From: Mytilus edulis
Taxonomy: Eukaryota
Direction of reading: 5' to 3'
DNA length: 64,000 nucleotides
Assembly: GCF_963676685.1 (NCBI RefSeq)
Contig: NC_092354.1
Location: 19,282,001-19,346,000 of the forward strand
Shown: positions 2,950 through 37,568 of the stretch, piece by piece
Layout of the letters: every line of letters starts with the position of its first letter
Numbering within the stretch: the first letter of the stretch is position 1
Program-made: the position numbers and the translations under genes
Notes under the pieces: generated by a model
What the model saw: the letters and a program-made list of their open reading frames with translations, nothing else
The model's database searches: none
Told to the model about the DNA's origin: nothing

Positions 2950-3538
2950 CCCTAGTTTTTGTCCATCTGATGAGTTAAGCCTTTCAACTGATTTTTAGAG
3001 GTCGTTCTTATGTTGTACTGTTATACCACTGTCCCAGGTTAGGAGAAGGGTTGGGATCCCGCTGACATTGTTAACTCCGCCACACATGAATGTGCCTGTC
3101 CCAAGGCAGGACCCTGAAATTTAGTGGTTTTCGTTTGTTTATGTGTTACATATTTGTTGTTCGTTCATTTTTTTATATAAATAAGGCCTTATTTATATAA
3201 AAAAATGAACGAAGAACAAATATGTAACACATAATCAAACGAAAACCACTAAATTACAGGGAACGAAGAACAAATATGTAACACATAAACAAACGCAAAC
3301 CACTAAATTACAGGGTCTTGCCTTGGGACAGGCACATTCATTAATAATGTGGCGGAGTTTTTCCGTTTCAATTGTTTGAGATCGTCATTTCTGGACCTTT
3401 TATAGCTGACTATGCGGGTTCGGCTTTGCTTATTGTTGAAGGCGGTACGGTTACCTGTAGTTGTTTATTTCTGTGTCATTTTGGTCTTTTGTGGACAGTT
3501 GTCCCATTAGCAATTATACCACATCTTCTTTTTCATAG
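2950..3538 (+). mobile_element. Non-autonomous Penelope-type tail repeat with internal foldback
   Basis: Twister-like motif, then the ...ttgttgaaggcggtacggttacc...ataccacatcttctttt tail; other copies at 1875-1990 (-), 46608-46715 (-), 53090-53197 (-). Confidence 0.6.
3026..3127 (+). ncRNA. Degenerate twister-like copy in a second Penelope-type tail family
   Basis: GGAG-AAGGG...UAA-CUCC-GCC...CCUG-UCCCAAGG-CAGG; P2 covaries relative to the 20276 copy; the catalytic G position is A. Confidence 0.55.
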
Positions 3539-5536: not shown

Positions 5537-8500
5537 CAAATCTTAAACATGTATTATCTGACTATTGCATTGTGAAAAGTTTAATTAGAAACCTAAAATA
5601 GATAAATGAGATCCTTAGTCAAGACATAGCAAACAAGGCAGCTGACTATATATGAAATATATTGATTATTAAATGAGGGGGGCAATACTTTTTTATATTA
5701 ACCTGTTTTTGCCTTTTTTCAAGGTGTTGTTAACTGTTATTTGAGATCATTTAAAGCTGTTAACAGTTTTCAACCCACTTTGTTAACTGTTATCAGCATT
5801 TTTTGCATTTTTTGTTATTAATAATTGTTTTTGCCAAAATCGAGGTGTTGTTAACATGTTAACGGACCCCCTATTTCCCCCTCTTTAATCTGGCATACTG
5901 CAAACATTTACATTTTTGGCTTCGTCGTGCATTGTTCTAGACAAAGTCATTAAGGAGTTCGATTGCTGTAGTTTTGAATTTGTTTGCAAAACATGACAAA
6001 GTTAAAAAAAGACATTTATCTGCAAATATCAAAAATGGGATTTATAAAAAGTTGATAGCTATTTTACAGCACTGAAACCTTCATGAGTTTCCTTATTGAA
6101 CACTGTTGAATGCAATCTATTTACCATGTTTACTAAAATGAAAGATTATTCCTACCAATTGTTTCAAAAATATTGGCAAAACATACATGACATATCTTGT
6201 CTTTAATGATAAATAATATAAATAATGTTCAATCGCTAAAAGAATTAAAAAAAAAATACAAGACTTTTATTTGCAAAACATTCTAGTTGAAAACAGGGGT
6301 CATGTTTAACAAAATTATTTTAAGATCATTTTTTTTTATTAGAAATATACAAATAAATAAAAGCAACAGTAGTATACTGCTATTCAAACTCATAAATCCA
6401 TGGACAAAAAACAAAATCGGGGTAACAAACTAAAACTGAACAATATTTGACAGTTTTAGGTTTTTGCATTTTCATGTCATATTATTTCAGAGCAAACATT
6501 TAAGCATTCCCGTGCTTGCATTTCCTATCATGATTTTCTTGATAGGAAGCTATTAAACCAAGCGTTCAAAATTGTGAAGTTAAAATCATCCCTTCGTAAA
6601 TTTTACGGACGCCATCATGAGTTGGTTGACCGTTATGGAATAACCGTTTCTCAAATGATATCGGATATGCACCTTACGTCGTAACTACAATATCCTTCCC
6701 TTTCATTAATGTGACCTATTAAATTAGACTATTTTCCGGATTTGTTATCACATAAGCAACACAACCGGTGCCACCTGTGGAGCAGGATCTACCCCTCCGG
6801 AGCACCTGCGTTGTCAGTTTACTTTCGATTTATGAGTTTGACTGTCCATTTGGTATCTTTCGTCCATCGTTAAACACTTCCATCATCACGCTTACATGTA
6901 TTACAGTGAAACCTGGCGAAACCGAACCTCTTCATTCATATTTTGAATAAAATGATTAAATAGAATAATCATTATGATTATGTAATATTGCTTATTATAT
7001 TCCTTGTATGTTCCGGACAACTCAGAAGTATGTCGCAGGAATACCATTCGTCAAAACTCGGTTGATTCCGTACCTCATAACGGATAGAAGGAAATTAGCG
7101 GAGTCACCCGAGGATTGCCGATTGGCATGAATATTTTACATTTGATACATGGAAGTACAATTGTAACACGCAATCTAAAATAAAAAGAATAAATGTGTTG
7201 TTAAAATAAAGAAACGTATGAGCTTAACGTTTATTTAGAATCTAATTTAAGACAGATCTTAGTTTTCATTAGCCTCAAATTTATACAATTATACATCAAT
7301 AATGTATTTATATTTTAAGGCCTCAAATTGATACAATTATACAAAAATAATGTATTTATTACTCAATGTATTCTGTTTGAATATTATTAAAACTACATTT
7401 ATTATGAATTTGAAACTGCTATATATTCATGATATGCATGTACTTCAAACTTGTAGCATATTGAACATTGTAGTTTATCAGCTAATCATTATTCTGTTAT
7501 ATTTAGGCCACACTTAAGAATAATTCAGTTTGTCCAAACCCAACCCAAAGATAGAACTCGTACCACTGGGAAGTCCTACCATTAAAAATATATTTAAAAA
7601 ATATGAATGTTTTATGTTTTTTTTTTTGTAAACTTAATAAAAATAAAGTTAAATTACTTGACTTAAGAGGTATTGAGTGAAAGTAAAGTACATATTCATC
7701 ATTTAACACCATTTAAATGCATTTAAATAAGTTGGTTCGAGTTAGCAGTGGTACGAGTTTGCATTGGTACGAGTTTTTATTTAGTGGTACGAGTTTACAT
7801 TGGTACGAGTTTACAATGGTACGGGATAACTATAATTCGAATCAGTGAGTAGGTAGGTAGGTAGTCATTTATTTTTATTATTATTTTTAACAAAGAGAAA
7901 TTAAATCGTTAAATGTTTTTTAGTCTCCATTCCTTTTTGATTAAAAACCACTTGATCACATGATGACAATAAAAGATTTGAAGTAGGCAGCTATTTTTGG
8001 GGTAGGTAGGGTTAGGCAAAACAAAACATCTTTTTATTATGGCCTTACTTAAAAAAATATTTGTTGATTCCAGTTGATAAAGAGGCCACTGATGGGCCTT
8101 TCCTTGGTTGTTTCGTTATGTCTGACATGGTTAGGGACCTTTCTGTGAACATTACCTTTCGGCTGTAGAGATAAAGGGAACATATCATCAGGATCAGCCA
8201 ATTTAACTATTATAACAATAGTCATTAAATTTCATTATAATCAGAATTTGACACTTAGTGTAAATATTTATGGATTTAAATCGTTAAATTAGTAATGTGC
8301 AAATGTTTAAACTTACAATGATTGAAGTTTCATACTCATCTGCTCATGAGAACTTAGATAATTAAAAATCAGATGTATATGGTTGGATATATCTCATTTT
8401 ATGTTTTATGACTATCAATATGTGACATTTAATGTACAAAAGACAATCCGTGTACCAAGTCAGGAATATGACAGTTGTTAATTATTCAATCGTTTTTTAT

Positions 8501-13400: not shown

Positions 13401-16342
13401 ACAAGACAAGTTGTATTCATTAAACGATTAGCACATCTCAACGTCACAAAAGAACTTTCCACCTAAAGCAATCATCAGCCCTAGAAAAACTAGTCCCAGA
13501 CTCTACTGAAATAGAATCAGACAATGATATTAAAAGATACTCGCGTAGACTAAAACATCTTGAGAACTGGTGTCTAGCAGACTATGTATCTGAATTTGAA
13601 TTGCAGTATCCTAAAACTTCAGAGTCCTCAGATCATGAATCAGAACAGCAGGACAATGGATCTGAAAGTGAAAATGAAGAGGCAAATGCAGATGTTATAA
13701 AAGAAAACAATAACAAAATTGACTTAACTCTGAAGAATGGTATTAGAATATACCAAAGAAAAACGCATAAGGTTATAAGATATGTTAAATACAATTACAA
13801 CACTGACTCTGAAAACTTCTACAGAGAACGCTTAATGTTATTTTGTCCATGGAGAAATGAACTTTCAGATTTGCAATGTGAACATGAAACATTTGAAAAA
13901 ATGTACTTGACTGTTGCAAGACTATTAGAATAAAAAGCCAAGAAATATGAGGGTAAAGTAATAGATCTAGAGAAAGCTATAGAAGAGGCAGAAAATGAAT
14001 GTAATGAGAATGATCAAATAGCATCTGCCACACAACAAGTAGAAATGGAAGATGCTGAATTAGGCCCACCAGAATCTGAACAGTATGTTCATTTCAATCC
14101 AGATAGACCAACAGAACATAGACTGTATGATATGTCCCGTGAAGTTGGAATTGCAAGAACAGTAGAATTGACAAATCATGCCAACAGAATAAGTGAGAGT
14201 GATTATTTTGCATTGAGAAGCTCCTTGAATAAAAAGCAGTGGGAATTTTTCCAACATGTTGTCACATGGGTTAAAACAAAACATGAACTATTTTATACAT
14301 TTTTGACAGGTGGAGCAGGATGCTGAAAATCTGTAGTTGTCAGAGCAATATTTCAAGCTTTACACAGACACTTATGTTCTATTGAAGGTGAGGACCCTGA
14401 CGATATAAGAATTCTTCTTTGTGCTCCTACTGGAAAGGCAGCTTACAATATAAATGGTCTGACTATTCACAATGCTTTCCAGATACAACCAAATAAAGGA
14501 CTTGACCAGTCAATGTCATGTGATGTGAATGAAATACAGAAATTTGTCTCTGATTTTGATTGATGAATGGTTGGAAACAAAATGTTCTCTTTACTGGAGA
14601 GAAGGCTGAAAAAAATCAAGGGAAGCAACTGTTCATTTGGTGGCGTCAGTATCATAGCTATTGGTGACTTTTTCCAACTCCAACCTGTATTTGACAGCTG
14701 GATGTTCAATTATCTTAGCAAAGGATTAACAGCATTAGCCCCTAATTACTGGAAATTAATATTTTCTATTCATGAACTTACTGAAATAATGAGACAAAAA
14801 GATGATTTAGAATTTGCTCTTCTACTAAATAGGTTGAGACAAGATCAGCTGACTGAAAATGCTTTTGCAGTTTTAAGTACCAGAATTGTTTCAATCAGTG
14901 ATCCAACATACAGAACTAATGCTACACATTTGTTTGTTGAAAATGCTTTAGTGGATAACTTTAATTTGCAATACATATCTAAATTAGGCTCACAAAAGGT
15001 TAAAGTTAAAGCAGTTGACACAGTTTGTGGGGATTTACCAGCATCTGTAAAGACAAAATTACTTAGTTCTTTACCAGAAAAACAGCCTGCTACATGTACC
15101 ACCAATCTTGCAAAAGAAGTAGTACCAGCAATTGGGATGAAATATGATCTTACAGCTAATATTTAAGTCACTGATGGTCTTACAAATAGTTCAACTTGTG
15201 AACTTAAATTGATTGCGTGCAAAACTGCATCTTTAATACCAAGTATTACATGGGTTAAGTTTGAAGATGCCAGAATATGTGCTAATAATAGAAAAAAATA
15301 TTCACACTTGTACGGAAAAGATGTTGAAAAAACATGGACTCCAATGTTTGACATTAAAAGATCATTTACTTAAAAATATAAGACATTTGAAATAATTCAG
15401 TTTCCTCTTCGCCCAGCAGCCGGATAAACAATTCATAAATCGCAAGGAGATACATTACACGAGGTTGTTGTTAGTCTGAAATCAAAACGTAAAGGGAAAA
15501 TACCACATATTGACTATGTTGCGCTAAGCAGAGCTACATCTTTAACTGGATTACAGATATTAATTCTTAATAAAGAAGCAATAGCTGTAGCAGATTGTGT
15601 TCGACAAGAATTACACAGACTAAGGACAGATGCAACTCTACAATTGTGCTTTAAGCCATTGTATAACTTATCAAGTAACTATTTTAAAGTAGTTTTTCAC
15701 AACTCAAGGTCATTGCATGCGCATTTTAATGATCTTAAATCAGACCCTAACATCTTAGATGCTGATGTTATTGGTATTGCTGAATCAAGACTTATTTCAA
15801 CAGATTAAAATGATGATTTTTATGTACCTGGTTTTGAACCACCAGTTCGATTAGACCAAAAGCAAACAAACTTTAATACAAGACCACCTCATGGATTGGT
15901 ATTATATTATCGAAATGATTGTATTCTTCACAATACAGCAACTTTCCAACTCCATCTTAAGTTTGTTATAGCAGACATAATATCACCCAGCAAAGGTCTT
16001 TTTCAGGTTGTCTTTGTTTACAAAGCACCAAACTGCAAATTGCAACAACTAAAAGATACTTTCCTTGCGAATCTTCTTCCTGACGTGTATTTAAGACATC
16101 CAAAAATCATCATAATGGGAGACTTTAATATTGATATAAACACTGGGAACACTTCTTTTTTAAAGTTCATGATAGATTCATTTTGCTGTTCACAAATTGT
16201 GTCTAAACCTACTACATCTTATGGTACATTGTTGGACTTAATTTTCCTAAATTTTGATAGTAAGCTAAATTTTGAAACAGATGTTCTTGATTCCTATTGG
16301 TCAGATCATAAAGTTATATATGTAGCCATTAAAACACAATGA
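10418..16342 (+). pseudogene. Helentron RepHel polyprotein: charged repeats, Zn-binding region, HUH Rep, PIF1-like helicase, APE-like endonuclease
   Basis: VEFQKRGSPHIHILIW (HUH), FLTGGAGC*KS (Walker A), GDFFQLQPV, ELTEIMRQKDD, IIMGDFNID...LLDLIF...YWSDHK (APE); many stops and frameshifts. Confidence 0.88.
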
Positions 16343-16951
16343 TTCAGTGTCATAATTATTTTATATGCCAAAACCAGCTTTGTTTAAAACAATGAAAATC
16401 AAACCTGCTGAAAAACGACACATTTTCGGTTGCTGAAAATGCAACCTCGAATGTGCAGGAGTGCTTCTAAAGGAAAATGGGTTTCCACTCCAACAGATTT
16501 GCCTTTTAATATGTAGGAATAGAAATGAGTTGGCTTCAAGACTCCTGATATCCAGTTTTACCTGTTTAGAAGAAAGCTTCTTTACAAAGCTTTCTTCTTT
16601 ATAGGTACACTGGATTAACGGTAACAGAGGTAATGAAATTTGAAACTGTGTTGCTTTGACGTCCATAAAGCAGAAAGGCCATTGGTGATTAGTCAACAAT
16701 TTTGCTATGGAAGAAAAGTAGAATTCCATTCATTTCAAGTCAGTAATGATTGGAGACATCAAATTTTACTACCTGAATGCTCATTGTATCAGTGGAGAGT
16801 TGTGTACACTTCGCATGTGAACACTCCTGATATTTACTCGTTATAAATGTATATTATCATTTTTACACAATTTAATCTACTGTGTGATGGTTCATATTCT
16901 GGACGCCAGTCTTTGCTCCTTTGTAATAAATCTACATACCAAAAAACAAAT

Positions 16952-19900
16952 ATGAAGCTTAGAAATGGAAAAATATTAAATACTAAACTCGTTCAAAGGG
17001 TATCTACACGTCTCAATCTTCAGAATCGCTTATCTAAAAATACGACCATAGCTAACGTTTTTAACAATAAAAATCGTGGTTACCCTTCTATCGATAAGTG
17101 TCATGCCAAAAAATGACTTACGTGTCCCCGTCTTTCCACCAACAATACAGTAAGGTCCACATTTAATGGTCGCACATTTTCTCTAAATTTTGAAACTGAT
17201 ATTACTTGAAAAACAAACAGTATTATTTATTTACTCACATGAAACAAACCGGGATGCGGTATTCAGTACGTAGGTGAAACTGGGCGATATTTATCTAAAC
17301 GCACGCAAGAACACCTGTATCGTTTTAAAAGACCCAATAAATTAAAAAGTATCATTTATCAACATCTTAAGAAGCACAGTCATCCTATTAAATATTTAAC
17401 AGTTCAACCTTTAGAAGTAGTAAATAAGCAGCCTGGTGAATCTCATTCCAAGTTTGTACGATCACGAAAAATAAATGAATTAAATTGGATTAAAAAATTA
17501 CAGACAGTCTACCCTCTCGGTCTTAATGATAATATCATGGGAATTGGCAATATATCAAGAACCGATTCTGTTAACATTTTGGATATAGTTTCTAAAACTG
17601 TTCGTAAAAATCGTTCTCATGGACGCAGAAAAAATCGCAATCAAAGAAAATTTCGGACCAACCATACAAATATTTCGGACCTAATTTCCATTTCAAAAAA
17701 CAACGGCAGACATTATCTGTTAACCAAGCTTTGTTCTTTACCTATAAATAAATTAAATAAAATTTTAGAGGATTGCAACACAATTTCATATTACAGTCCT
17801 AAGTATGAAATTGTCCAAATTATAATGGCATATTGTTATTCTAAACTGTTTCCAAAAATTGATCGCCCTGAAGATCATAAAAAACATTTTATTAAAATAA
17901 AGTATGTCAATAAAGGTTTTGATTTTGTAAATATTGCCGGTATTTTTAACGACCATTCTGTTAAAGACCAAATTCCTGGATATTTTGATAATACTGAACT
18001 CCCTCTCATTTGTTATATTTACAAGAAATCTACCCGAAAATATGTGTTTAATTATAGCCAATTGTGTAAAGATGTAAATATCACTGAAAATACACCTATG
18101 TCGTGTAATTGCAGTAATTCAGAATACACCTATGGACCAATTTCCCATGTTATAACAGGAGACCTTAACATCGTTCGCGACCGAGAGTTAAAATCATTCC
18201 TCAGTAAAGGACCTAAATATCGTCCCCCGTCAACTGTTAACTGGAATGAGTGTCGTAATATCATCAACGACTCACTCCGCGCCTACTGTTTGAAATGGGT
18301 AAAACGGGAAAAAGCTGACAAAAAATCTTTGGACTCTTTTTTTAATTCAGTAATGAAGATAGTTGATATTCGAATACAACATTTTAAAGAACATTTTACC
18401 CTCAACAAAAACTATAAAAACCCTATTTCGCGTATCAAAAATAAACTAACAGAACTAGCCAAGGAATTTGTTTTTGTCCCGGCTGATAAAGCTGCTAATA
18501 ATATCATTATTGTTTGACGTAAATTTTATATAGAGGTTCTGCAAAAGGAAATCACGAATTCACCAACATTCCAACTGACTTCATTTTCAGAAAACGACAT
18601 CTGTAACAAACATAAACTTTTAGCTACTTCTTTACAAGCAGAACCAAACACAATGAAAGTCCCAACTATGTACTGGCTTCCGAAGCTGCACAAAAAACCT
18701 TACAAATATAGATTTATTTCATCTTCCAGCCATTGTTCAACTACTAAATTGTCTGTTTTACTTACTAGTACACTTGGTACAATAAAAAACCTGATAATAA
18801 ATTGTTCAAATAAGGCCTTTGAAAATAGTGGAATTAATTACTTTTGGAGTGTCAAAAACTCGTTGGAAGTACTCGATAAATTGCATGCATATATTGGTGA
18901 TTTTGAATCTGTTCAAAGTTTTGATTTTTCTACCCTATATACCACTTTGCCTCATATTCTTATTAAGAAAAAATTCACATCCCTAATTAACTGGGCATTT
19001 AAAAAGTCGGAATGCGAGTACATATGTTCAAACTCTTTTAGATCATTTTTTAGTAGCAATAAACAAAAGAACTATGTCAATTGGACATGCTTTGATACTA
19101 TTTATGCACTTGAATTTTTACTTGATAACATTTTTGTTCGCTTTGGAGATTCCGTATATCGTCAAGTTATTGGAATTCCAATGGGGACTAACTGTGCACC
19201 ACTTATTGCGGACCTGTTTTTGTATTGTTATGAGTTACAATTTATGACGAAAATTAGCAAAGACCCATCAAAACAACATTTGATACAAAAATTTAACAAT
19301 ACTTTTAGATATTTGGATGATATATTGGCTCTAAATAATGACGACTTCAGTATGTATACTAAAGAAATTTATCCTGTAGAACTTACTTTAAATAAAGCTA
19401 ATGATAACAATGACCACTGCCCTTTCCTCGATCTTGATATCTATATCATAAACGGGAAGCTTAATACAAAAATTTATGATAAAAGAGATGATTTTTCATT
19501 TCCTATTGTTAATTATCCATTTTTAGATGGTGACGTTCCCTTGTCACCATCTTATGGTGTTTATATATCTCAACTTGTACGATTCGCTCGTGTATGTAAC
19601 AATGTATTAGATTTTAGCGAGAGAAATTTATGTATTACTGAAAAATTATTACACCAGGGTTTTCGATATCACAAACTGGTCAAAACATTTACTAAATTTT
19701 ATCACCGGTATAAGGAAATAATTCGTAAATATAACTCAACATGCAGACATCTTATACGTTCAGGTATTTCACATCCAAAATTTTATGGAAATATTCTTTA
19801 TAAAGCACAAAAATGTCAGTATTCTCCTCAGAAACTAACAAAACCTTTAAATAGACTTATTAAAAGGGGATATAGTTACGATACTGTTGTCAGGTCATTA

Positions 19901-19960
19901 AAGATTGCATATTTTGGCTTTAACATTGATTCACTGATAGGGTCTTTGCATCGGAACTAA
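16952..19960 (+). CDS. GIY-YIG endonuclease / reverse transcriptase selenoprotein (~1002 aa, 4 predicted Sec)
   Basis: Single frame from ATG 16952 to TAA 19958-19960; the only internal stops are TGA at 17114, 17207, 17240 and 18515, each at a Cys-type position; SECIS downstream. Confidence 0.85.
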
Positions 19961-20001
19961 ACACATTTATTTCTAAAAAAACAGTTGTTGGCATGACACG
20001 G

Positions 20002-20092
20002 GTTATGTTCTTCTCATATATTTTATGATAGTATGATACTAAACCCCTAACGGGAGGGATTGTACCTGATATTCATATGATGAAGACATAAT
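20002..20092 (+). promoter_or_regulatory. SECIS element (type 2)
   Basis: AUGA (20025-28), helix II gtatgat/attgtac, unpaired AAA (20041-43), ccc/ggg mini-stem, UGAU (20067-70), helix I tcatat/atatga and ttatgttcttc/gaagacataa. Confidence 0.85.
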
Positions 20093-20275
20093 CTTTCAAT
20101 CAGTTTAATTGAGGTCTGGAGCTGGCATGTCAGTTAACTGCTAGTAGTCTGTTGTTATTTATGTATTATTGTCATTTTATTTATTTTCTTTTGTTACATC
20201 TTTTGACATCAGACTCGGACTTCTCTTGAACTGAATTTTAATGTGCGTATTGTTATTGTTTTACTTTTCTACATT

Positions 20276-20366
20276 GGCTAGAGGTATAGGGGGAGGGTTG
20301 AGATCTCATAAACATGTTTAACCCCGCCGCAATTTTGCGCCTGTCCCAAGTCAGGAGCCTCTGGCC
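20276..20366 (+). ncRNA. Twister ribozyme-like fold, P5-type permutation
   Basis: GGGG-GAGGG...U^AA-CCCC-GC-P3-CCUG-UCCCAAGU-CAGG closed by ggctagaggt/gcctctggcc; matches the twister core apart from P1. Confidence 0.7.
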
Positions 20367-21319
20367 TTTGTTAGTCTTGTATGATTTTAAATTTTAGTTT
20401 CTTGTGTATAATTCGGAGTTTAGTATGACGTCCATTATCACTGTACTATTATGCATATTTTAGGGGCCAGCTGAAGGACACCTACGGGTGCGGGAATTCT
20501 CGCTACATTGAAGACCCATTGGTTGCCTTCGGCTGTTGTTTGCTCTATGGTCGGATGGTTGTCGCTTTGACATATTCACCATTTCCTTTCTCAATTTTAT
20601 ATATATATAATTCTTGAAATATTTGTTTTTGAATACAATCAAAACCCATTGCTTTAATATAGATGTAAAAAGGAAGTTTTGAAGACCACAAGTTCCATGC
20701 CTCATTTCTCTTCCTACAAAATTATTAAATTTAACTGGCTGTTTTATGAACTATTATTAAATAATCAAAATGTTTATGAATGTCGAAATCCTTGCTGTTA
20801 TGTACATATATTCATTGTAATTTTTCATATAGATAACTTGATACAACTTACAATACTTTTGTTCACTATATATATATATATATGATATATGATAACCATG
20901 TATCATGATTAAGTATGTACAGTTTACTTTTTGTAATGCCAACTTAATCTATATTTATCTCATCCAATATTCATTGACTTTTTTGTTTAAGAAATGCTCT
21001 CATGTTCATATTAGACATAATAAATCAGTTTCTGTACAAATACCACAAATTTTATTATAATATAATTACTTGGAGTTCTCCAAATTGAAAAACAATCCAT
21101 AAATCCAACATTTTTGATTTCTTATGATTTCAATTATGTCTTATTCTAAGTACAGGTTTATCAAAATGTGTAAATCATTAAAGGTTTAAATGTTGAGAAA
21201 AAAAATCAAATATTGCATTAATTTTTCATTCTACTCGACTATGTAGTTGCATTTTTTCTTATACATTTGATAAATATGTAGAAGTCATTTATAAAACAGA
21301 AACTAATGAACAATTCATG

Positions 21320-21595
21320 CAAACATTTGCTTCATAGAGAAAAAATGTGTGAACATTTGCTTAATAGAGAAGAAATTTGTAACATTTGCATATTAGAGAA
21401 GAATTTGTGAACATTTGCTTTCATAGAGCAGAAATTTGTGACATTTGCCTATTAGAAAAGAACTTGTGAACATTTGCTTAATAGAGCAGAAATTTGTGAA
21501 CATTTGCTTAATAGAGCAGAAATTTGTGAACATTTCCTTAATAGAGCAGAAATTTGTGAACATTTGCTTAATACAGAAGAAATTTAAGAACATTT
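21320..21595 (+). repeat. 30-bp minisatellite
   Basis: (aatagagcagaaatttgtgaacatttgctt)n, about 9 degenerate units. Confidence 0.85.
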
Positions 21596-35919: not shown

Positions 35920-37568
35920 TATTGTCAACTAATGGAAACTCAAAATAAACTCTCACGACACTTACCAAAGAGGAAATCCTGGATAATCATAAGTCTGTTC
36001 TATGTTCCTTTAGAATTTCAACAAAATTACAAACTAGATCTACCATCACTGTATTTAGAACTTAAACTACATTAGTGTCCTTACAAACAATGGTATATTG
36101 TTGGGTCTTCCAAGTGCTCCACGAAACTTCAGACTAAATTATTAACATCTATTTTATCAGCAATTTAATCCGGGCTTCAAAGTTATTGTTAAACTGCTTT
36201 TTCTAGAGGTGGCGTGAATCAGATGTGGATACTAAAAGAATCCAAAGATCTTTTAGAGTACATTCAATCTAAGTCTCTGTCATCTTGAAATAGTACTAAA
36301 ACATTTGATGTTCTACACTTTACATTTATTTATTTACCGGATTTGTAATCACATAAGCAACACGACGGGTGCCGCATGTGGAGCAGGATCTGCTTACCCT
36401 TCCGGAGCACCTGAGATCACCCCTAGTTTTTGGTGGGGTTCGTGTTGTTTATTCTTTAGTTTTCTATGTTGTGTCATGTGTGCTATTGTTTTTCTGTTTG
36501 TCTTTTTCATTTTTAGCCATGGCGTTGTCAGTTTGTTTTAGATTTATGAGTTTGACTGTCCCTTTGGTATCTTTCGTCCCTCTTTTACACAAGTATTCCA
36601 CATTCCAAACTAAAAGAACAATTGAACGAGTTGGTATTGCTTTGTTTCATAAAAAAAAGAATGGCCAACGCAGATACAAGTATCTTGTCTTAGGAAGGGA
36701 TAAACTGACTTTATCAAGATGATCGATTTTTTTATTATTGACAACATATTTGTTACGTTCGGAGGACGTGGTTTTCAACGGACTGTCGTCATTCAAATTA
36801 GAACCAATTGTGCCCCTATTTTTGCAGACTTGTTTCTTTATTATTATGAGGCTGACTTCATACAGGAACTTCTTAAAAAGAAAGATAAGAGGCTAGCAAT
36901 ATCCTTTAACTTTACTTTCCGCTATATAGATGATGTTCTTTCAACTAATAATTCAAAATTAGGTGACTATGTTGAAGGCATCTATCCCATCGTACTAGAG
37001 ATAAAGGATACTACAGATACAGTTAAGTCGGCCTCATATCCTGACTAACAGCACCTGCATACGGGGTATATATCCCGTGCTTGTATTTCCTATCATGATT
37101 TTCTTGATAGAGGGTTGCTGCTCACAAGGAAGGTATTAACCCAATAGTTCCAAATGGTGAATTTGAAATCATCCCTTCGTACATTTTACAGACGCCATCA
37201 CGAGTTGGTTGACCGTTATGGAATAACCGTTTCACAGATGATATCGGATATGTTCCTTACGTCGAACTACAATCCCCTTCCCTTTTATGAATGTGACCTA
37301 CCGAATTAGACTATTTACTGGATTTGTTATAACATGAGCAACACGACGGGTGCCACATGACGAGCAGGATCTGCTTACCCTTCCGGGGCATCTGAGATCA
37401 CCCCTAGTTTTTGGAGGGGTTTGTTTTGCTTATTCTTTAGTTTTATATGTTGCGTCATGTGTACTATAGTTTGTCTGTTTGTCTTTTTCATTTTTAGCCA
37501 TGTCGTTGTCAGTTTATTTTCGATTTATGAGTTTGACTGTCCCCTCTGGTATCTTTCGTCCCTCTTTT
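35920..37568 (+). pseudogene. Degenerate Penelope-like (Naiad-related) RT copy with 3' tail; a tail copy is also inserted at ~36330-36585
   Basis: LPSLYLELKLH, DNIFVTFGG, TNCAPIFADLFLY, FRYIDDVL; many stops; tail copies also at 6510-6870 (+) and 8555-8780 (-). Confidence 0.8.

What the first reader, a model, noticed from the sequence alone, without database searches (positions are those of the whole stretch)
16952..20092. Retrotransposon selenoprotein: four in-frame UGA at cysteine positions plus a SECIS
Seen: the three called ORFs share one frame, and I translated the gaps by hand. The protein reads KCHAKK*LTCP...DIT*KTNSIIYLLT*NKPGCGIQYVGETGR...DKAANNIIIV*RKFY...RT. All four stops are TGA (17114, 17207, 17240, 18515). 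There are no TAA/TAG stops or frameshifts in ~1000 codons, and the real terminator is TAA. A canonical SECIS begins ~40 nt after the stop. Known: PLE GIY-YIG domains have Cys at these motif positions, and Sec-encoding Naiad PLEs have been reported, so the class is not wholly new. Inference: this is an intact, possibly active element whose translation depends on host Sec machinery, and standard annotation would miscall it as a pseudogene.
Basis: partly seen in the sequence, partly recalled or inferred. Interest (0 to 1): 0.95.

Follow-up and report, generated by a model that had tools for sequence, protein, structure and literature searches.

The report
Selenocysteine-encoding Naiad retrotransposon with SECIS
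This is a young, high-copy, transcribed Penelope-like (Naiad) retrotransposon in a mollusc genome whose endonuclease/reverse-transcriptase gene has four UGA codons at conserved cysteine positions, most likely read as selenocysteine with the help of a SECIS hairpin; the kind was described in clams and spiders in 2021, so this is a good new example, not a new kind.

Summary
Window 16952-19960 (+) is one frame of 1002 codons. Its only internal stops are TGA at 17114, 17207, 17240 and 18515, and it ends in TAA.

- **Cysteine positions:** all four TGA align to invariant Cys columns in 49 full-length Naiad-type proteins.
- **Conservation:** the TGA are kept in a 94%-identical variant (dN/dS 0.10), a second family in the same genome (62% aa identity, with a fifth TGA at the CxC motif) and a third family (48%). 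Cys and Sec swap at these same sites.
- **SECIS:** a SECIS-like hairpin lies at about 20009-20086 (Rfam 30.9 bits, below the cut-off of 35). It has the same geometry in four families, with many compensatory pairs.
- **Host and expression:** the genome has tRNA-Sec genes, and RNA-seq reads cover the element.
- **Copies:** the 35-mer around the fourth UGA occurs 371 times with TGA and never with TGC, TGG or TGT.
- **Caveat:** the window copy has an intact ORF but lacks the first 284 bp of the 4031-bp unit and has no upstream pseudo-LTR.

The class is published (Craig et al. 2021, clams and spiders), so this is a new member. Other first-stage notes of this scan flagged sister copies elsewhere in this genome. 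One side finding: a twister-like ribozyme motif at 20276-20366, supported by covariation.

The parts
16854..20600 (+). This copy of the retroelement ('fam1'): 3747 bp, 5'-truncated by 284 bp relative to the 4031-bp unit, with no upstream pseudo-LTR
   Evidence: Similarity to 29 other genomic copies (99.6-99.8%) starts at 16854 and ends at 20600. Other copies share up to 284 more bases upstream, and tandem pairs are spaced 4030-4032 bp. RNA-seq reads diverge at 20600.
16952..19960 (+). Single ORF: 1002 codons plus TAA, encoding an N-terminal GIY-YIG endonuclease, a CxC linker and a reverse transcriptase, with four in-frame UGA
   Evidence: 27 of the 30 best-matching copies have the same frame with only these four TGA and the TAA.
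17114..17116 (+). UGA 1 (codon 55): second Cys of the C-x4-C-x2-C zinc-finger-like motif upstream of GIY-YIG
   Evidence: Cys in 38 of 38 aligned homologs. TGA in fam1, fam1b and fam2; TGC/TGT in fam3.
17207..17209 (+). UGA 2 (codon 86): conserved Cys just before the GIY strand
   Evidence: Cys in 44 of 44 homologs. TGA in fam1, fam1b, fam2 and fam3.
17240..17242 (+). UGA 3 (codon 97): conserved Cys between the GIY and YIG motifs (first of the Cys pair before IQYVGET)
   Evidence: Cys in 45 of 45 homologs. TGA in fam1, fam1b, fam2 and fam3.
17099..17530 (+). Zinc-finger-like motifs and GIY-YIG endonuclease domain (approximate limits)
   Evidence: This stretch aligns to the part of homologs P0008, P0012 and P0027 that matches Pfam GIY-YIG PF01541 above its cut-off. 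The window's own pieces give no Pfam hit.
18104..18112 (+). CxC motif of the linker (Cys-Asn-Cys, codons 385-387). The first Cys is TGT here and TGA in fam2, fam3 and L067.
   Evidence: Several metagenome ORF calls end exactly before this Cys.
18485..18493 (+). DKA motif (Naiad form of the PLE DKG motif)
   Evidence: Alignment block PADKAANN, conserved in 49 homologs.
18515..18517 (+). UGA 4 (codon 522): Cys eight residues after DKA
   Evidence: Cys in 49 of 49 homologs. TGA in fam1, fam1b, fam2, fam3, L066, L067 and L068; TGT/TGC in fam4. The 35-mer occurs 371 times with TGA and 0 times with TGC/TGG/TGT in the genome.
18650..19600 (+). Reverse-transcriptase core (approximate limits)
   Evidence: Homologs match Pfam RVT_1 weakly at the aligned place. 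The nearest protein-atlas clusters carry RVT_1 and HTH_animal. aa identity to fam2 is 68% here.
20009..20086 (+). SECIS-like hairpin in the 3' UTR: lower stem, AUGA (20025) opposite UGAU, an 11-position upper stem, and an AAA-containing apical loop with a 3-bp mini-stem
   Evidence: Rfam SECIS_1 at 20015-20079, 30.9 bits, E 0.004. Fold. Same geometry and compensatory pairs in four families.
20276..20366 (+). Twister-like ribozyme motif in the P5-open (permuted) order; predicted cleavage between U20319 and A20320 (side finding)
   Evidence: On six sequences, 97.9% of cells pair against 29-53% for slid partners, and 6 pairs change on both sides, one of them in pseudoknot T1. P5 and T2 were checked. 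The Rfam twister models do not hit it.
20600..20610 (.). 3' junction with a short (TA)n tract, the usual kind of Naiad target
   Evidence: Sequence. Loose read ends beyond 20600 are AT-rich and differ between copies.

Best explanation
Window 16854-20600 is one copy of a young, high-copy Naiad-clade Penelope-like retrotransposon. Its single ORF encodes an N-terminal GIY-YIG endonuclease, a CxC linker and a reverse transcriptase.

Four cysteine positions are written as UGA. Three lie in the zinc-finger-like and GIY-YIG part of the endonuclease, and one lies eight residues after the DKA motif at the start of the RT part. These UGA are most likely decoded as selenocysteine by the host machinery (tRNA-Sec, SECIS-binding protein, Sec elongation factor), recruited by a SECIS hairpin about 50 nt after the TAA stop. 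The full 1002-residue protein would then carry four Sec.

Shown here:
- the frame
- the UGA-to-Cys correspondence
- conservation of the UGA and of the SECIS structure across diverged families under purifying selection
- host tRNA-Sec genes
- RNA reads that cover the element
- recent amplification to hundreds of near-identical copies

Inferred, not shown:
- actual insertion of Sec
- activity of the protein

The window copy has an intact ORF but is 5'-truncated and lacks a pseudo-LTR. It is probably a dead-on-arrival insertion of an active family.
For: - **Frame and codons:**
- **Cys alignment:** the four UGA align to Cys in 38/38, 44/44, 45/45 and 49/49 non-gap rows of 49 full-length homologs. 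Those homologs carry an N-terminal Pfam GIY-YIG and a weak C-terminal RVT_1 match.
- **fam2:** a second family in the same genome is 62.5% aa and 67% nt identical. It keeps all four TGA, has a fifth at the first Cys of CxC, and has no other stop in 1001 codons.
- **Metagenome relatives:** fam1b (93.7% aa) keeps the four TGA. fam3 (48-51% aa) has Cys at site 1 and TGA at sites 2, 3, CxC and 4. fam4 has Cys at CxC and site 4. So Cys and Sec interchange at exactly these columns.
- **Selection:** dN/dS for fam1 against fam1b is 0.10 at dS 0.28, and at most 0.11 in every segment between UGA codons. Synonymous sites are saturated between the families.
- **SECIS:** Rfam gives 30.9 and 32.3 bits. Helix 2 pairs in 65 of 70 cells in one fixed register across four families, against 23-36 of 70 when slid, with 2-4 pair types per position. 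The spacing from AUGA to AAA is identical.
- **Host:** five tRNA-Sec loci score above the Rfam cut-off.
- **RNA:** RNA-seq raw reads cover the whole element, flank depth is about 0, one library has a 5-8-fold strand bias over the ORF, and no variant is listed at the four TGA.
- **Copies:** 371 exact copies of the 35-mer with TGA and none with TGC/TGG/TGT. 27 of the 30 best copies have the same intact frame.
- **Published precedent:** Naiad selenoproteins with UGA at the same three endonuclease/DKA positions in clams (PMC8557442).
Against: - No direct evidence of Sec insertion (no 75Se labelling, mass spectrometry or ribosome profiling).
- The SECIS scores below Rfam's gathering threshold, and Rfam does not detect the fam2-fam4 versions at all.
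- In fam2 the AUGA/GA core could also form ordinary Watson-Crick pairs.
- The window's own protein pieces get no Pfam hit at E <= 0.1 and no PDB sequence hit, so the domain assignment rests on aligned homologs and motifs.
- Copies within fam1 are too young (about 0.3% divergence) for their TGA conservation alone to show selection.
- The RNA reads come from a species coded 'organism E' and map to the whole repeat family. They show family-level RNA, partly perhaps read-through transcription, and not expression of this copy.
Confidence: 0.85

Rival explanations
1. The UGA codons are passed by a mechanism other than Sec insertion, for example near-cognate read-through giving Trp, Cys or Arg. The 3'-UTR hairpin would then serve another purpose, such as template recognition by the RT.
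For: Sec insertion was not measured. The hairpin is below Rfam's SECIS cut-off and is missed in fam2-fam4. 3' hairpins in retroelements often serve the RT.
Against: The hairpin keeps the features that define a SECIS, not just any stem: AUGA and GA facing each other, a fixed 11-position helix, and unpaired AAA at a fixed distance, in four families. The stops are only ever UGA, never UAA or UAG, and lie only at Cys columns. The true terminator is TAA in every family. Four or five successive inefficient read-throughs would leave very little full-length protein, yet the family amplified.
Confidence: 0.07
2. The copies are non-autonomous. Translation stops at the first UGA, and the family is copied in trans by proteins of other, Cys-encoding Naiads.
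For: The genome holds other PLE and Naiad families. Trans-mobilisation of defective retroelements is common.
Against: dN/dS is about 0.1 in every segment downstream of each UGA, and the 1000-codon frame stays intact across saturated synonymous divergence in three families. That requires translation of the whole ORF. No Cys or Trp version of the fam1 site-4 35-mer exists in the genome, against 371 with TGA.
Confidence: 0.05
3. It is a decayed pseudogene copy, and the four TGA are chance nonsense mutations.
For: Standard ORF calling splits it into three or more pieces.
Against: All four stops are the same codon, sit at invariant Cys columns, and are shared by hundreds of copies and by families as little as 48% identical in protein. 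There are no frameshifts and no other stops.
Confidence: 0.01

Closest known systems
[quoted passage not shown]
   Same: Same architecture: N-terminal GIY-YIG, CxC linker, DKA motif, RT. UGA at the Cys before GIY-YIG, at the first Cys of the CCHH finger and at the Cys eight residues after DKA. SECIS just downstream of a UAA/UAG stop. Bivalve-type host. High copy number and pseudo-LTR/tandem insertions.
   Different: This element adds a UGA at the second Cys of the CX2-5CxxC motif, which is reported only for a spider family. The sister family fam2 has five UGA, including one at the CxC motif, a position not reported. The paper describes type I SECIS, whereas the fam1 hairpin has an apical mini-stem (type II-like). 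I could not compare sequences directly, because the consensus sequences are in a supplement not held here. Whether these families share a Sec-bearing ancestor with the clam families is therefore untested.
Naiad_Sdum and Naiad_Smim (Stegodyphus spiders), same paper
   Same: Multi-Sec Naiads. UGA in the CX2-5CxxC finger, before GIY-YIG and after DKA. 3'-UTR SECIS.
   Different: Arthropod host, said in the paper to have arisen independently of the clam families. The spiders lack the CCHH-finger UGA that this element shares with clams.
Selenoprotein P of bivalves (Baclaocos et al. 2019, cited in PMC8557442)
   Same: A host protein with many UGA-Sec codons read processively. It shows that bivalve ribosomes can decode several UGA in one mRNA.
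   Different: It is a cellular selenium-transport protein with dedicated SECIS pairs, not a mobile element, and has no homology to this ORF.
Canonical Penelope-like elements with hammerhead ribozymes in their pseudo-LTRs (Cervera and de la Pena 2014; Lunse et al. 2017, from my own knowledge)
   Same: GIY-YIG plus RT retroelements inserted as partial tandems, with a small self-cleaving ribozyme motif in the repeated 3' region. Palindromic stems suggest dimer formation.
   Different: The domain order is permuted here. No hammerhead is found in the element; the motif present is twister-like instead.

Membership tests
Naiad clade of Penelope-like elements | GIY-YIG endonuclease N-terminal to the reverse transcriptase in one ORF | tested here: met
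   The ORF aligns end to end with 840-1300-aa homologs. Those homologs match Pfam GIY-YIG at residues about 90-220 and RVT_1 at about 650-850. The window's own pieces give no Pfam hit, so this rests on homology and on visible motifs (IIY...QYVGET; PMG; YLDD).
Naiad clade of Penelope-like elements | CX2-5CxxC and CCHH zinc-finger-like motifs at the endonuclease | tested here: met
   C-x4-U-x2-C at codons 50-58, with conserved Cys/Sec at codons 86, 97 and 102, in register with homologs.
Naiad clade of Penelope-like elements | CxC motif in the linker, and DKA in place of DKG | tested here: met
   Cys-Asn-Cys at codons 385-387 and DKA at codons 512-514.
Naiad clade of Penelope-like elements | Pseudo-LTR or partial tandem insertions, variable 5' truncation, unit of 3.4-4.4 kb, (TA)n targets | tested here: met
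   Tandem pairs are spaced 4030-4032 bp, and about half of 30 loci have an upstream partial copy. 5' ends are variable. A (TA)5 tract lies at the window copy's 3' junction. The window copy itself is solo and 5'-truncated.
Naiad clade of Penelope-like elements | No canonical hammerhead ribozyme | tested here: met
   Rfam E-value scans of the window copy and of full tandem units find only SECIS_1.
Naiad clade of Penelope-like elements | Insertion-in-fingers domain in the RT | not tested
   No structure or profile comparison was run for it.
Eukaryotic selenoprotein gene | In-frame UGA aligned with Cys (or Sec) in homologs | tested here: met
Eukaryotic selenoprotein gene | Coding constraint continues downstream of each UGA | tested here: met
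   dN/dS is at most 0.11 in all four segments for fam1 against fam1b. The frame is intact across three families.
Eukaryotic selenoprotein gene | SECIS in the 3' UTR: AUGA/GA quartet, helix 2 of about 9-12 bp, unpaired AA(R) in the apical loop or bulge | tested here: met
   All features are present and covary in four families. Caveats: Rfam SECIS_1 gives 30.9 bits against a cut-off of 35, and SECISearch3 is not available here.
Eukaryotic selenoprotein gene | Host has the Sec machinery | tested here: met
   Five tRNA-Sec loci score above the Rfam cut-off, at 77-79.6 bits. The protein factors were not searched.
Eukaryotic selenoprotein gene | Selenium actually incorporated | not testable with these tools
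   Needs 75Se labelling, mass spectrometry or ribosome profiling.
Twister ribozyme (side finding, window 20276-20366) | Stems P2 and P4 with optional P3 and P5, pseudoknots T1 and T2, conserved loop nucleotides, and a U-A cleavage site | tested here: inconclusive
   P2, P3, P4 and T1 pair in 97.9% of cells, with 6 pairs changed on both sides. P5 forms with a different sequence in each of four lineages, and T2 pairs in 5 of 6 sequences. However, P1 is replaced by two palindromes, the Rfam twister models give no hit on the window copy and only 20.3 bits on L065, and self-cleavage is untested.

The most novel reading that the evidence does not exclude
This bivalve Naiad lineage has swapped the hammerhead of canonical Penelope-like elements for a permuted (P5-open) twister ribozyme in its repeated 3' region, with P1 replaced by two palindromes that could let two units pair. 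It has also diversified as a whole clade of multi-Sec elements with four or five Sec, including a previously unreported Sec at the CxC motif. The twister would cut tandem transcripts at U20319/A20320 into unit-length RNAs that keep the SECIS. That would answer how Naiads, reported to lack ribozymes, process their RNA. I found no paper linking twister to Naiads in the searched library.
Probability: 0.45. Interest if true: 0.75.

Novelty: new member of a known kind. Interest (0 to 1): 0.5.

Why it matters
Selenoprotein-encoding transposons are known from only four families, in two clams and two spiders. This genome adds a very young, transcribed family with hundreds of near-identical copies. It also adds diverged relatives that between them show Cys/Sec exchange at five positions, with up to five Sec in one protein.

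That gives three things:
- A natural series for asking why a mobile element would tie its endonuclease and RT to the host's selenium supply.
- A source of mobile SECIS elements that could seed new host selenoprotein genes.
- A concrete warning for annotation, because ORF callers cut these genes at every UGA.

If the twister-like motif in the same element is active, it would fill a gap left open in the description of Naiads: how elements without hammerheads process their tandem transcripts.

Tried and rejected
- **Pfam and PDB on the window's own pieces:** Pfam found no relevant family at E <= 0.1. A PDB sequence search of the RT piece found nothing meaningful. Domain calls therefore rest on homologs.
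- **The look-up of encoding contigs:** That they end in TGA is inferred only from their ending exactly at the Cys columns.
- **Metagenome scans:** the first scan, with P0002, found nothing. An 11-sequence alignment was too variable to search with. The scan with the fam1/fam2 RT alignment succeeded.
- **More genome DNA:** Intermediate subfamilies seen (56-57% matches, one with three TGA) could not be examined.
- **Young copies:** within-family conservation of TGA (30/30, first 100) is not evidence of selection, because the copies differ by only about 0.3%.
- **Rfam on other families:** it did not find a SECIS in fam2-fam4. These were located by the AUGA-N12-AAA spacing and checked by folding and pair counts.
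- **MAFFT alignment of the SECIS (A3):** it put a gap inside helix 2, so pairs were counted in a script by register from the AUGA/GA core instead.
- **Published consensus sequences:** the paper's supplement is not held.
- **Twister cleavage in reads:** RNA-seq read starts did not mark the predicted cleavage site (table 6). This is uninformative at that depth and with that library type.
Full report
**What is in the sequence.**
Window 16952-19960 on the + strand is a single reading frame of 1002 codons. Its only internal stops are four TGA, at 17114, 17207, 17240 and 18515. It ends in TAA at 19958.

**Limits of the element.**
Comparison with 29 other copies from the same genome (99.6-99.8% identical) puts this copy's limits at 16854 and 20600.
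- Other copies carry up to 284 more bases at the 5' end.
- Neighbouring copies lie head to tail 4030-4032 bp apart, so the full unit is 4031 bp.
- About half of the 30 loci have a partial copy (pseudo-LTR) upstream, and 5' ends vary.
- In full-length copies the frame is closed upstream, and the first ATG is the one at 16952.

The window copy therefore has a complete ORF but is 5'-truncated and solo. Its 3' end abuts a short (TA)n tract.

**What kind of element.**
The piece between the third and fourth TGA has 2761 relatives in the representative protein library.
- Forty-nine of them are full-length proteins of 840-1300 residues and align along the whole ORF.
- Examples match Pfam GIY-YIG near the N-terminus, above the cut-off, and RVT_1 weakly near the C-terminus.
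- The window's own pieces are too divergent, or too short, for Pfam and for a PDB sequence search.
- The diagnostic motifs are all present: C-x4-C-x2-C, the GIY...YIG core, a Lys/Arg-rich stretch, CxC, DKA, and the RT motifs.

This is the architecture of the Naiad clade of Penelope-like elements, as defined by Craig et al. 2021 (PMC8557442). The nearest protein-atlas cluster is molluscan. The species is withheld. The assembly is 1.37 Gb with 14 chromosome-sized contigs, which I would guess is a mytilid mussel. That guess rests on my own knowledge only.

**Are the UGA codons read?**
1. With X placed at each stop, the four positions fall on columns that are Cys in 38/38, 44/44, 45/45 and 49/49 of the aligned homologs.
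2. A second family in the same genome (fam2; loci L043-L048) is 62.5% identical in protein and 67% in DNA. It has TGA at all four homologous codons and a fifth TGA at the first Cys of the CxC motif, where fam1 has TGT. It has no other stop in 1001 codons and ends in TAA.
3. Metagenome contigs add further lineages:

| Lineage | aa identity to fam1 | State at the Cys/Sec sites |
|---|---|---|
| fam1b (L055) | 93.7% | the four TGA kept |
| fam3 (L058-L060, L063) | 48-51% | Cys (TGC/TGT) at site 1; TGA at sites 2, 3, CxC and 4 |
| L067 | about 45% | TGA at CxC and site 4 |
| fam4 (L062, L064, L065) | 55-67% | Cys at site 4 (all three); Cys at CxC (covered in L064 only); N-terminus not covered |

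4. Stops in intact copies are always TGA and always at Cys columns, and Cys and TGA interchange there. This is the usual signature of Sec/Cys homologs.
5. Selection acts on the whole ORF. For fam1 against fam1b, dN/dS is 0.10 at dS 0.28, and at most 0.11 in each of the four segments delimited by the UGA codons. Between families, synonymous sites are saturated while the frame is kept.
6. Several ORF-called metagenome proteins, 37-68% identical, end exactly before site 4 or before the CxC Cys.

**The SECIS.**
Rfam's SECIS_1 model matches 20015-20079 at 30.9 bits (E 0.004 in a 6-kb scan; cut-off 35), and fam1b at 32.3 bits. The fold has a lower stem, AUGA facing UGAU, an 11-position upper stem with two mismatches, and an AAA-containing apical loop with a small mini-stem.

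Rfam misses the other families. Even so, each of them has a hairpin with the same geometry: N-UGA, twelve nucleotides, then AA(A), in the 3' UTR 6-140 nt after the TAA. I counted pairs in register from the core. Helix 2 pairs in 65 of 70 cells across seven sequences of four families, against 23-36 of 70 when the partner strand is slid. Each position has two to four different Watson-Crick or wobble pair types.

This is good covariation support for a conserved SECIS-type stem of fixed length. Two cautions remain. In fam2 the core can also pair conventionally. And fam4, which has Cys at the two sites covered, still has the hairpin, while its N-terminal sites are unknown.

**Host, expression and activity.**
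- The genome has five tRNA-Sec loci above Rfam's cut-off.
- RNA-seq raw reads of a species that carries the element cover the whole unit, with almost no depth in the flank. In one library there is a 5-8-fold strand bias over the ORF, in the direction expected for sense RNA. There is a strong rise towards the 3' end, and no variant is listed at the four TGA. This shows RNA from the family, not from this copy.
- The 35-mer centred on site 4 occurs 371 times exactly with TGA and never with TGC, TGG or TGT, and 504 times when two mismatches are allowed.
- 27 of the 30 best copies have the same clean frame.

The family therefore amplified very recently while carrying the UGA codons. No near-identical Cys-encoding master was found at the one site tested (site 4).

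**Most likely mechanism.**
The element RNA is translated by host ribosomes. At each UGA, the SECIS in the 3' UTR recruits the host Sec-insertion factors and Sec-tRNA, so a 1002-residue endonuclease-RT with four Sec is made. It then nicks (TA)n-type targets and copies its RNA by target-primed reverse transcription, often producing partial tandems and 5'-truncated copies like this one.

The frame, the conservation, the RNA structure, the host tRNA and the transcription are shown. Sec insertion, and the role of Sec in the zinc-finger-like and DKA-proximal sites, are inferred.

The rivals each have little support: chance nonsense mutations, trans-mobilised dead copies, and read-through without Sec. 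They are scored in the rival list.

**Comparison with what is known.**
Craig et al. 2021 reported Naiad selenoproteins in two clams and two spiders, with three or four UGA. In clams the UGA fall at the Cys before GIY-YIG, the first Cys of the CCHH finger and the Cys eight residues after DKA. A SECIS follows directly after a UAA/UAG stop. The present element shares those three positions.

What differs:
- A UGA at the second Cys of the CX2-5CxxC motif, which the paper reports only for a spider family.
- Five UGA in the sister family fam2.
- A UGA at the CxC motif, which is not reported.
- A mini-stem in the fam1 SECIS.

The paper curated mussel Naiads and notes that their CX2-5CxxC motif is lengthened by a 5-aa insert. 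This element has no such insert. The paper names only the four clam and spider families as Sec-bearing. No later paper on such elements turned up. I file this as a new member of a known kind.

Other first-stage notes of this scan describe sister copies on other pieces of the same genome. They are unchecked and were not used as evidence.

**Side finding.**
A lead from another first-stage note made me look at 20276-20366. The stretch reads as a twister ribozyme in the P5-open order:
- a 9-bp P5 closing the motif
- the 3' strand of P2, followed by GAGGG
- a 21-nt stretch holding two palindromes where P1 should be
- UAA (20319-20321)
- the 5' strand of P2, then GCC
- a P3 hairpin
- a P4 hairpin with loop UCCCAAGU

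I aligned fam1, fam1b, fam2, fam2b, fam4 and an unrelated repeat at window 3026-3127. P2, P3, P4 and T1 pair in 97.9% of cells, against 29-53% when slid. Six pairs change on both sides, one of them in the T1 pseudoknot. P5 forms from a different sequence in each of the four lineages, and T2 pairs in five of the six sequences.

The Rfam twister models do not hit the window copy and give only 20.3 bits on L065. Cleavage is untested. I found no paper linking twister ribozymes to Naiads. The Naiad paper states that Naiads lack canonical hammerheads.

If the motif is active, cleavage at U20319/A20320 in tandem transcripts would release unit-length RNAs that still carry the SECIS.

**Limits.**
One bench step, a mobility test of a cloned element, is referred and not proposed here.

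Noticed in passing
window 20276-20366 (+); also L043 6103-6186, L055 3824-3913, L065 2056-2157: A twister-like ribozyme motif in the P5-open order lies in the 3' region of the Naiad families. It has covarying P2, P3, P5 and T1, and two palindromes where P1 should be. Rfam's twister models do not detect it. No paper found links twister to Naiads.
   Followed up: partly
window 2983-3127 (+): A different repeat carries the same twister-like motif with compensatory changes in P2, P3 and P5. It matches element positions 20226-20360 at 71% identity. The motif is thus shared by more than one repeat family in this genome.
   Followed up: partly
L043 2425-5430 (G000 C10:55714572-55722549) and sister loci L044, L045, L048: A second Naiad family of the same genome has five in-frame TGA. 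The fifth is at the first Cys of the CxC motif, a Sec position not listed in the 2021 paper.
   Followed up: yes
proteins P0003, P0005, P0006, P0026, P0059, P0122 and P0001, P0002, P0004, P0009, P0020, P0042, P0048: Metagenome ORF calls of relatives, 37-68% identical, end exactly before the CxC Cys or before the Cys after DKA. This suggests many more Sec-bearing Naiad lineages, which gene callers cut into pieces.
   Followed up: partly
window 36034-37243 and 6493-6660 (+): Weak matches (32-34% aa identity) to the RT part of the element. These are fragments of other Penelope-like or RT-bearing repeats in the window.
   Followed up: no
window 21322-21595: A minisatellite of 30-bp units, 9.2 copies, 85% matches, about 700 bp downstream of the element.
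   Followed up: no
window 16550-16615: A near-perfect 66-nt palindromic hairpin upstream of the element. It gives weak microRNA-precursor-like Rfam hits on both strands, far below the cut-off.
   Followed up: no
window 15896-16342 (+): A 148-aa ORF just upstream of the insertion. By eye its tail looks like the end of an AP-endonuclease domain of a non-LTR retrotransposon. Not tested.
   Followed up: no
L048 8442-8485 (-): A Hammerhead_1 match of 33 bits (cut-off 34) next to a fam2 copy. It probably belongs to a canonical Penelope-like element nearby.
   Followed up: no
G000 C7:74815896-75374462 and C1:49149863: Five tRNA-Sec genes above the cut-off, four of them identical in score and spread over 560 kb of one chromosome. 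Long arrays of a weaker tRNA-like hit, spaced about 895 bp apart, lie on C10 and C945.
   Followed up: no
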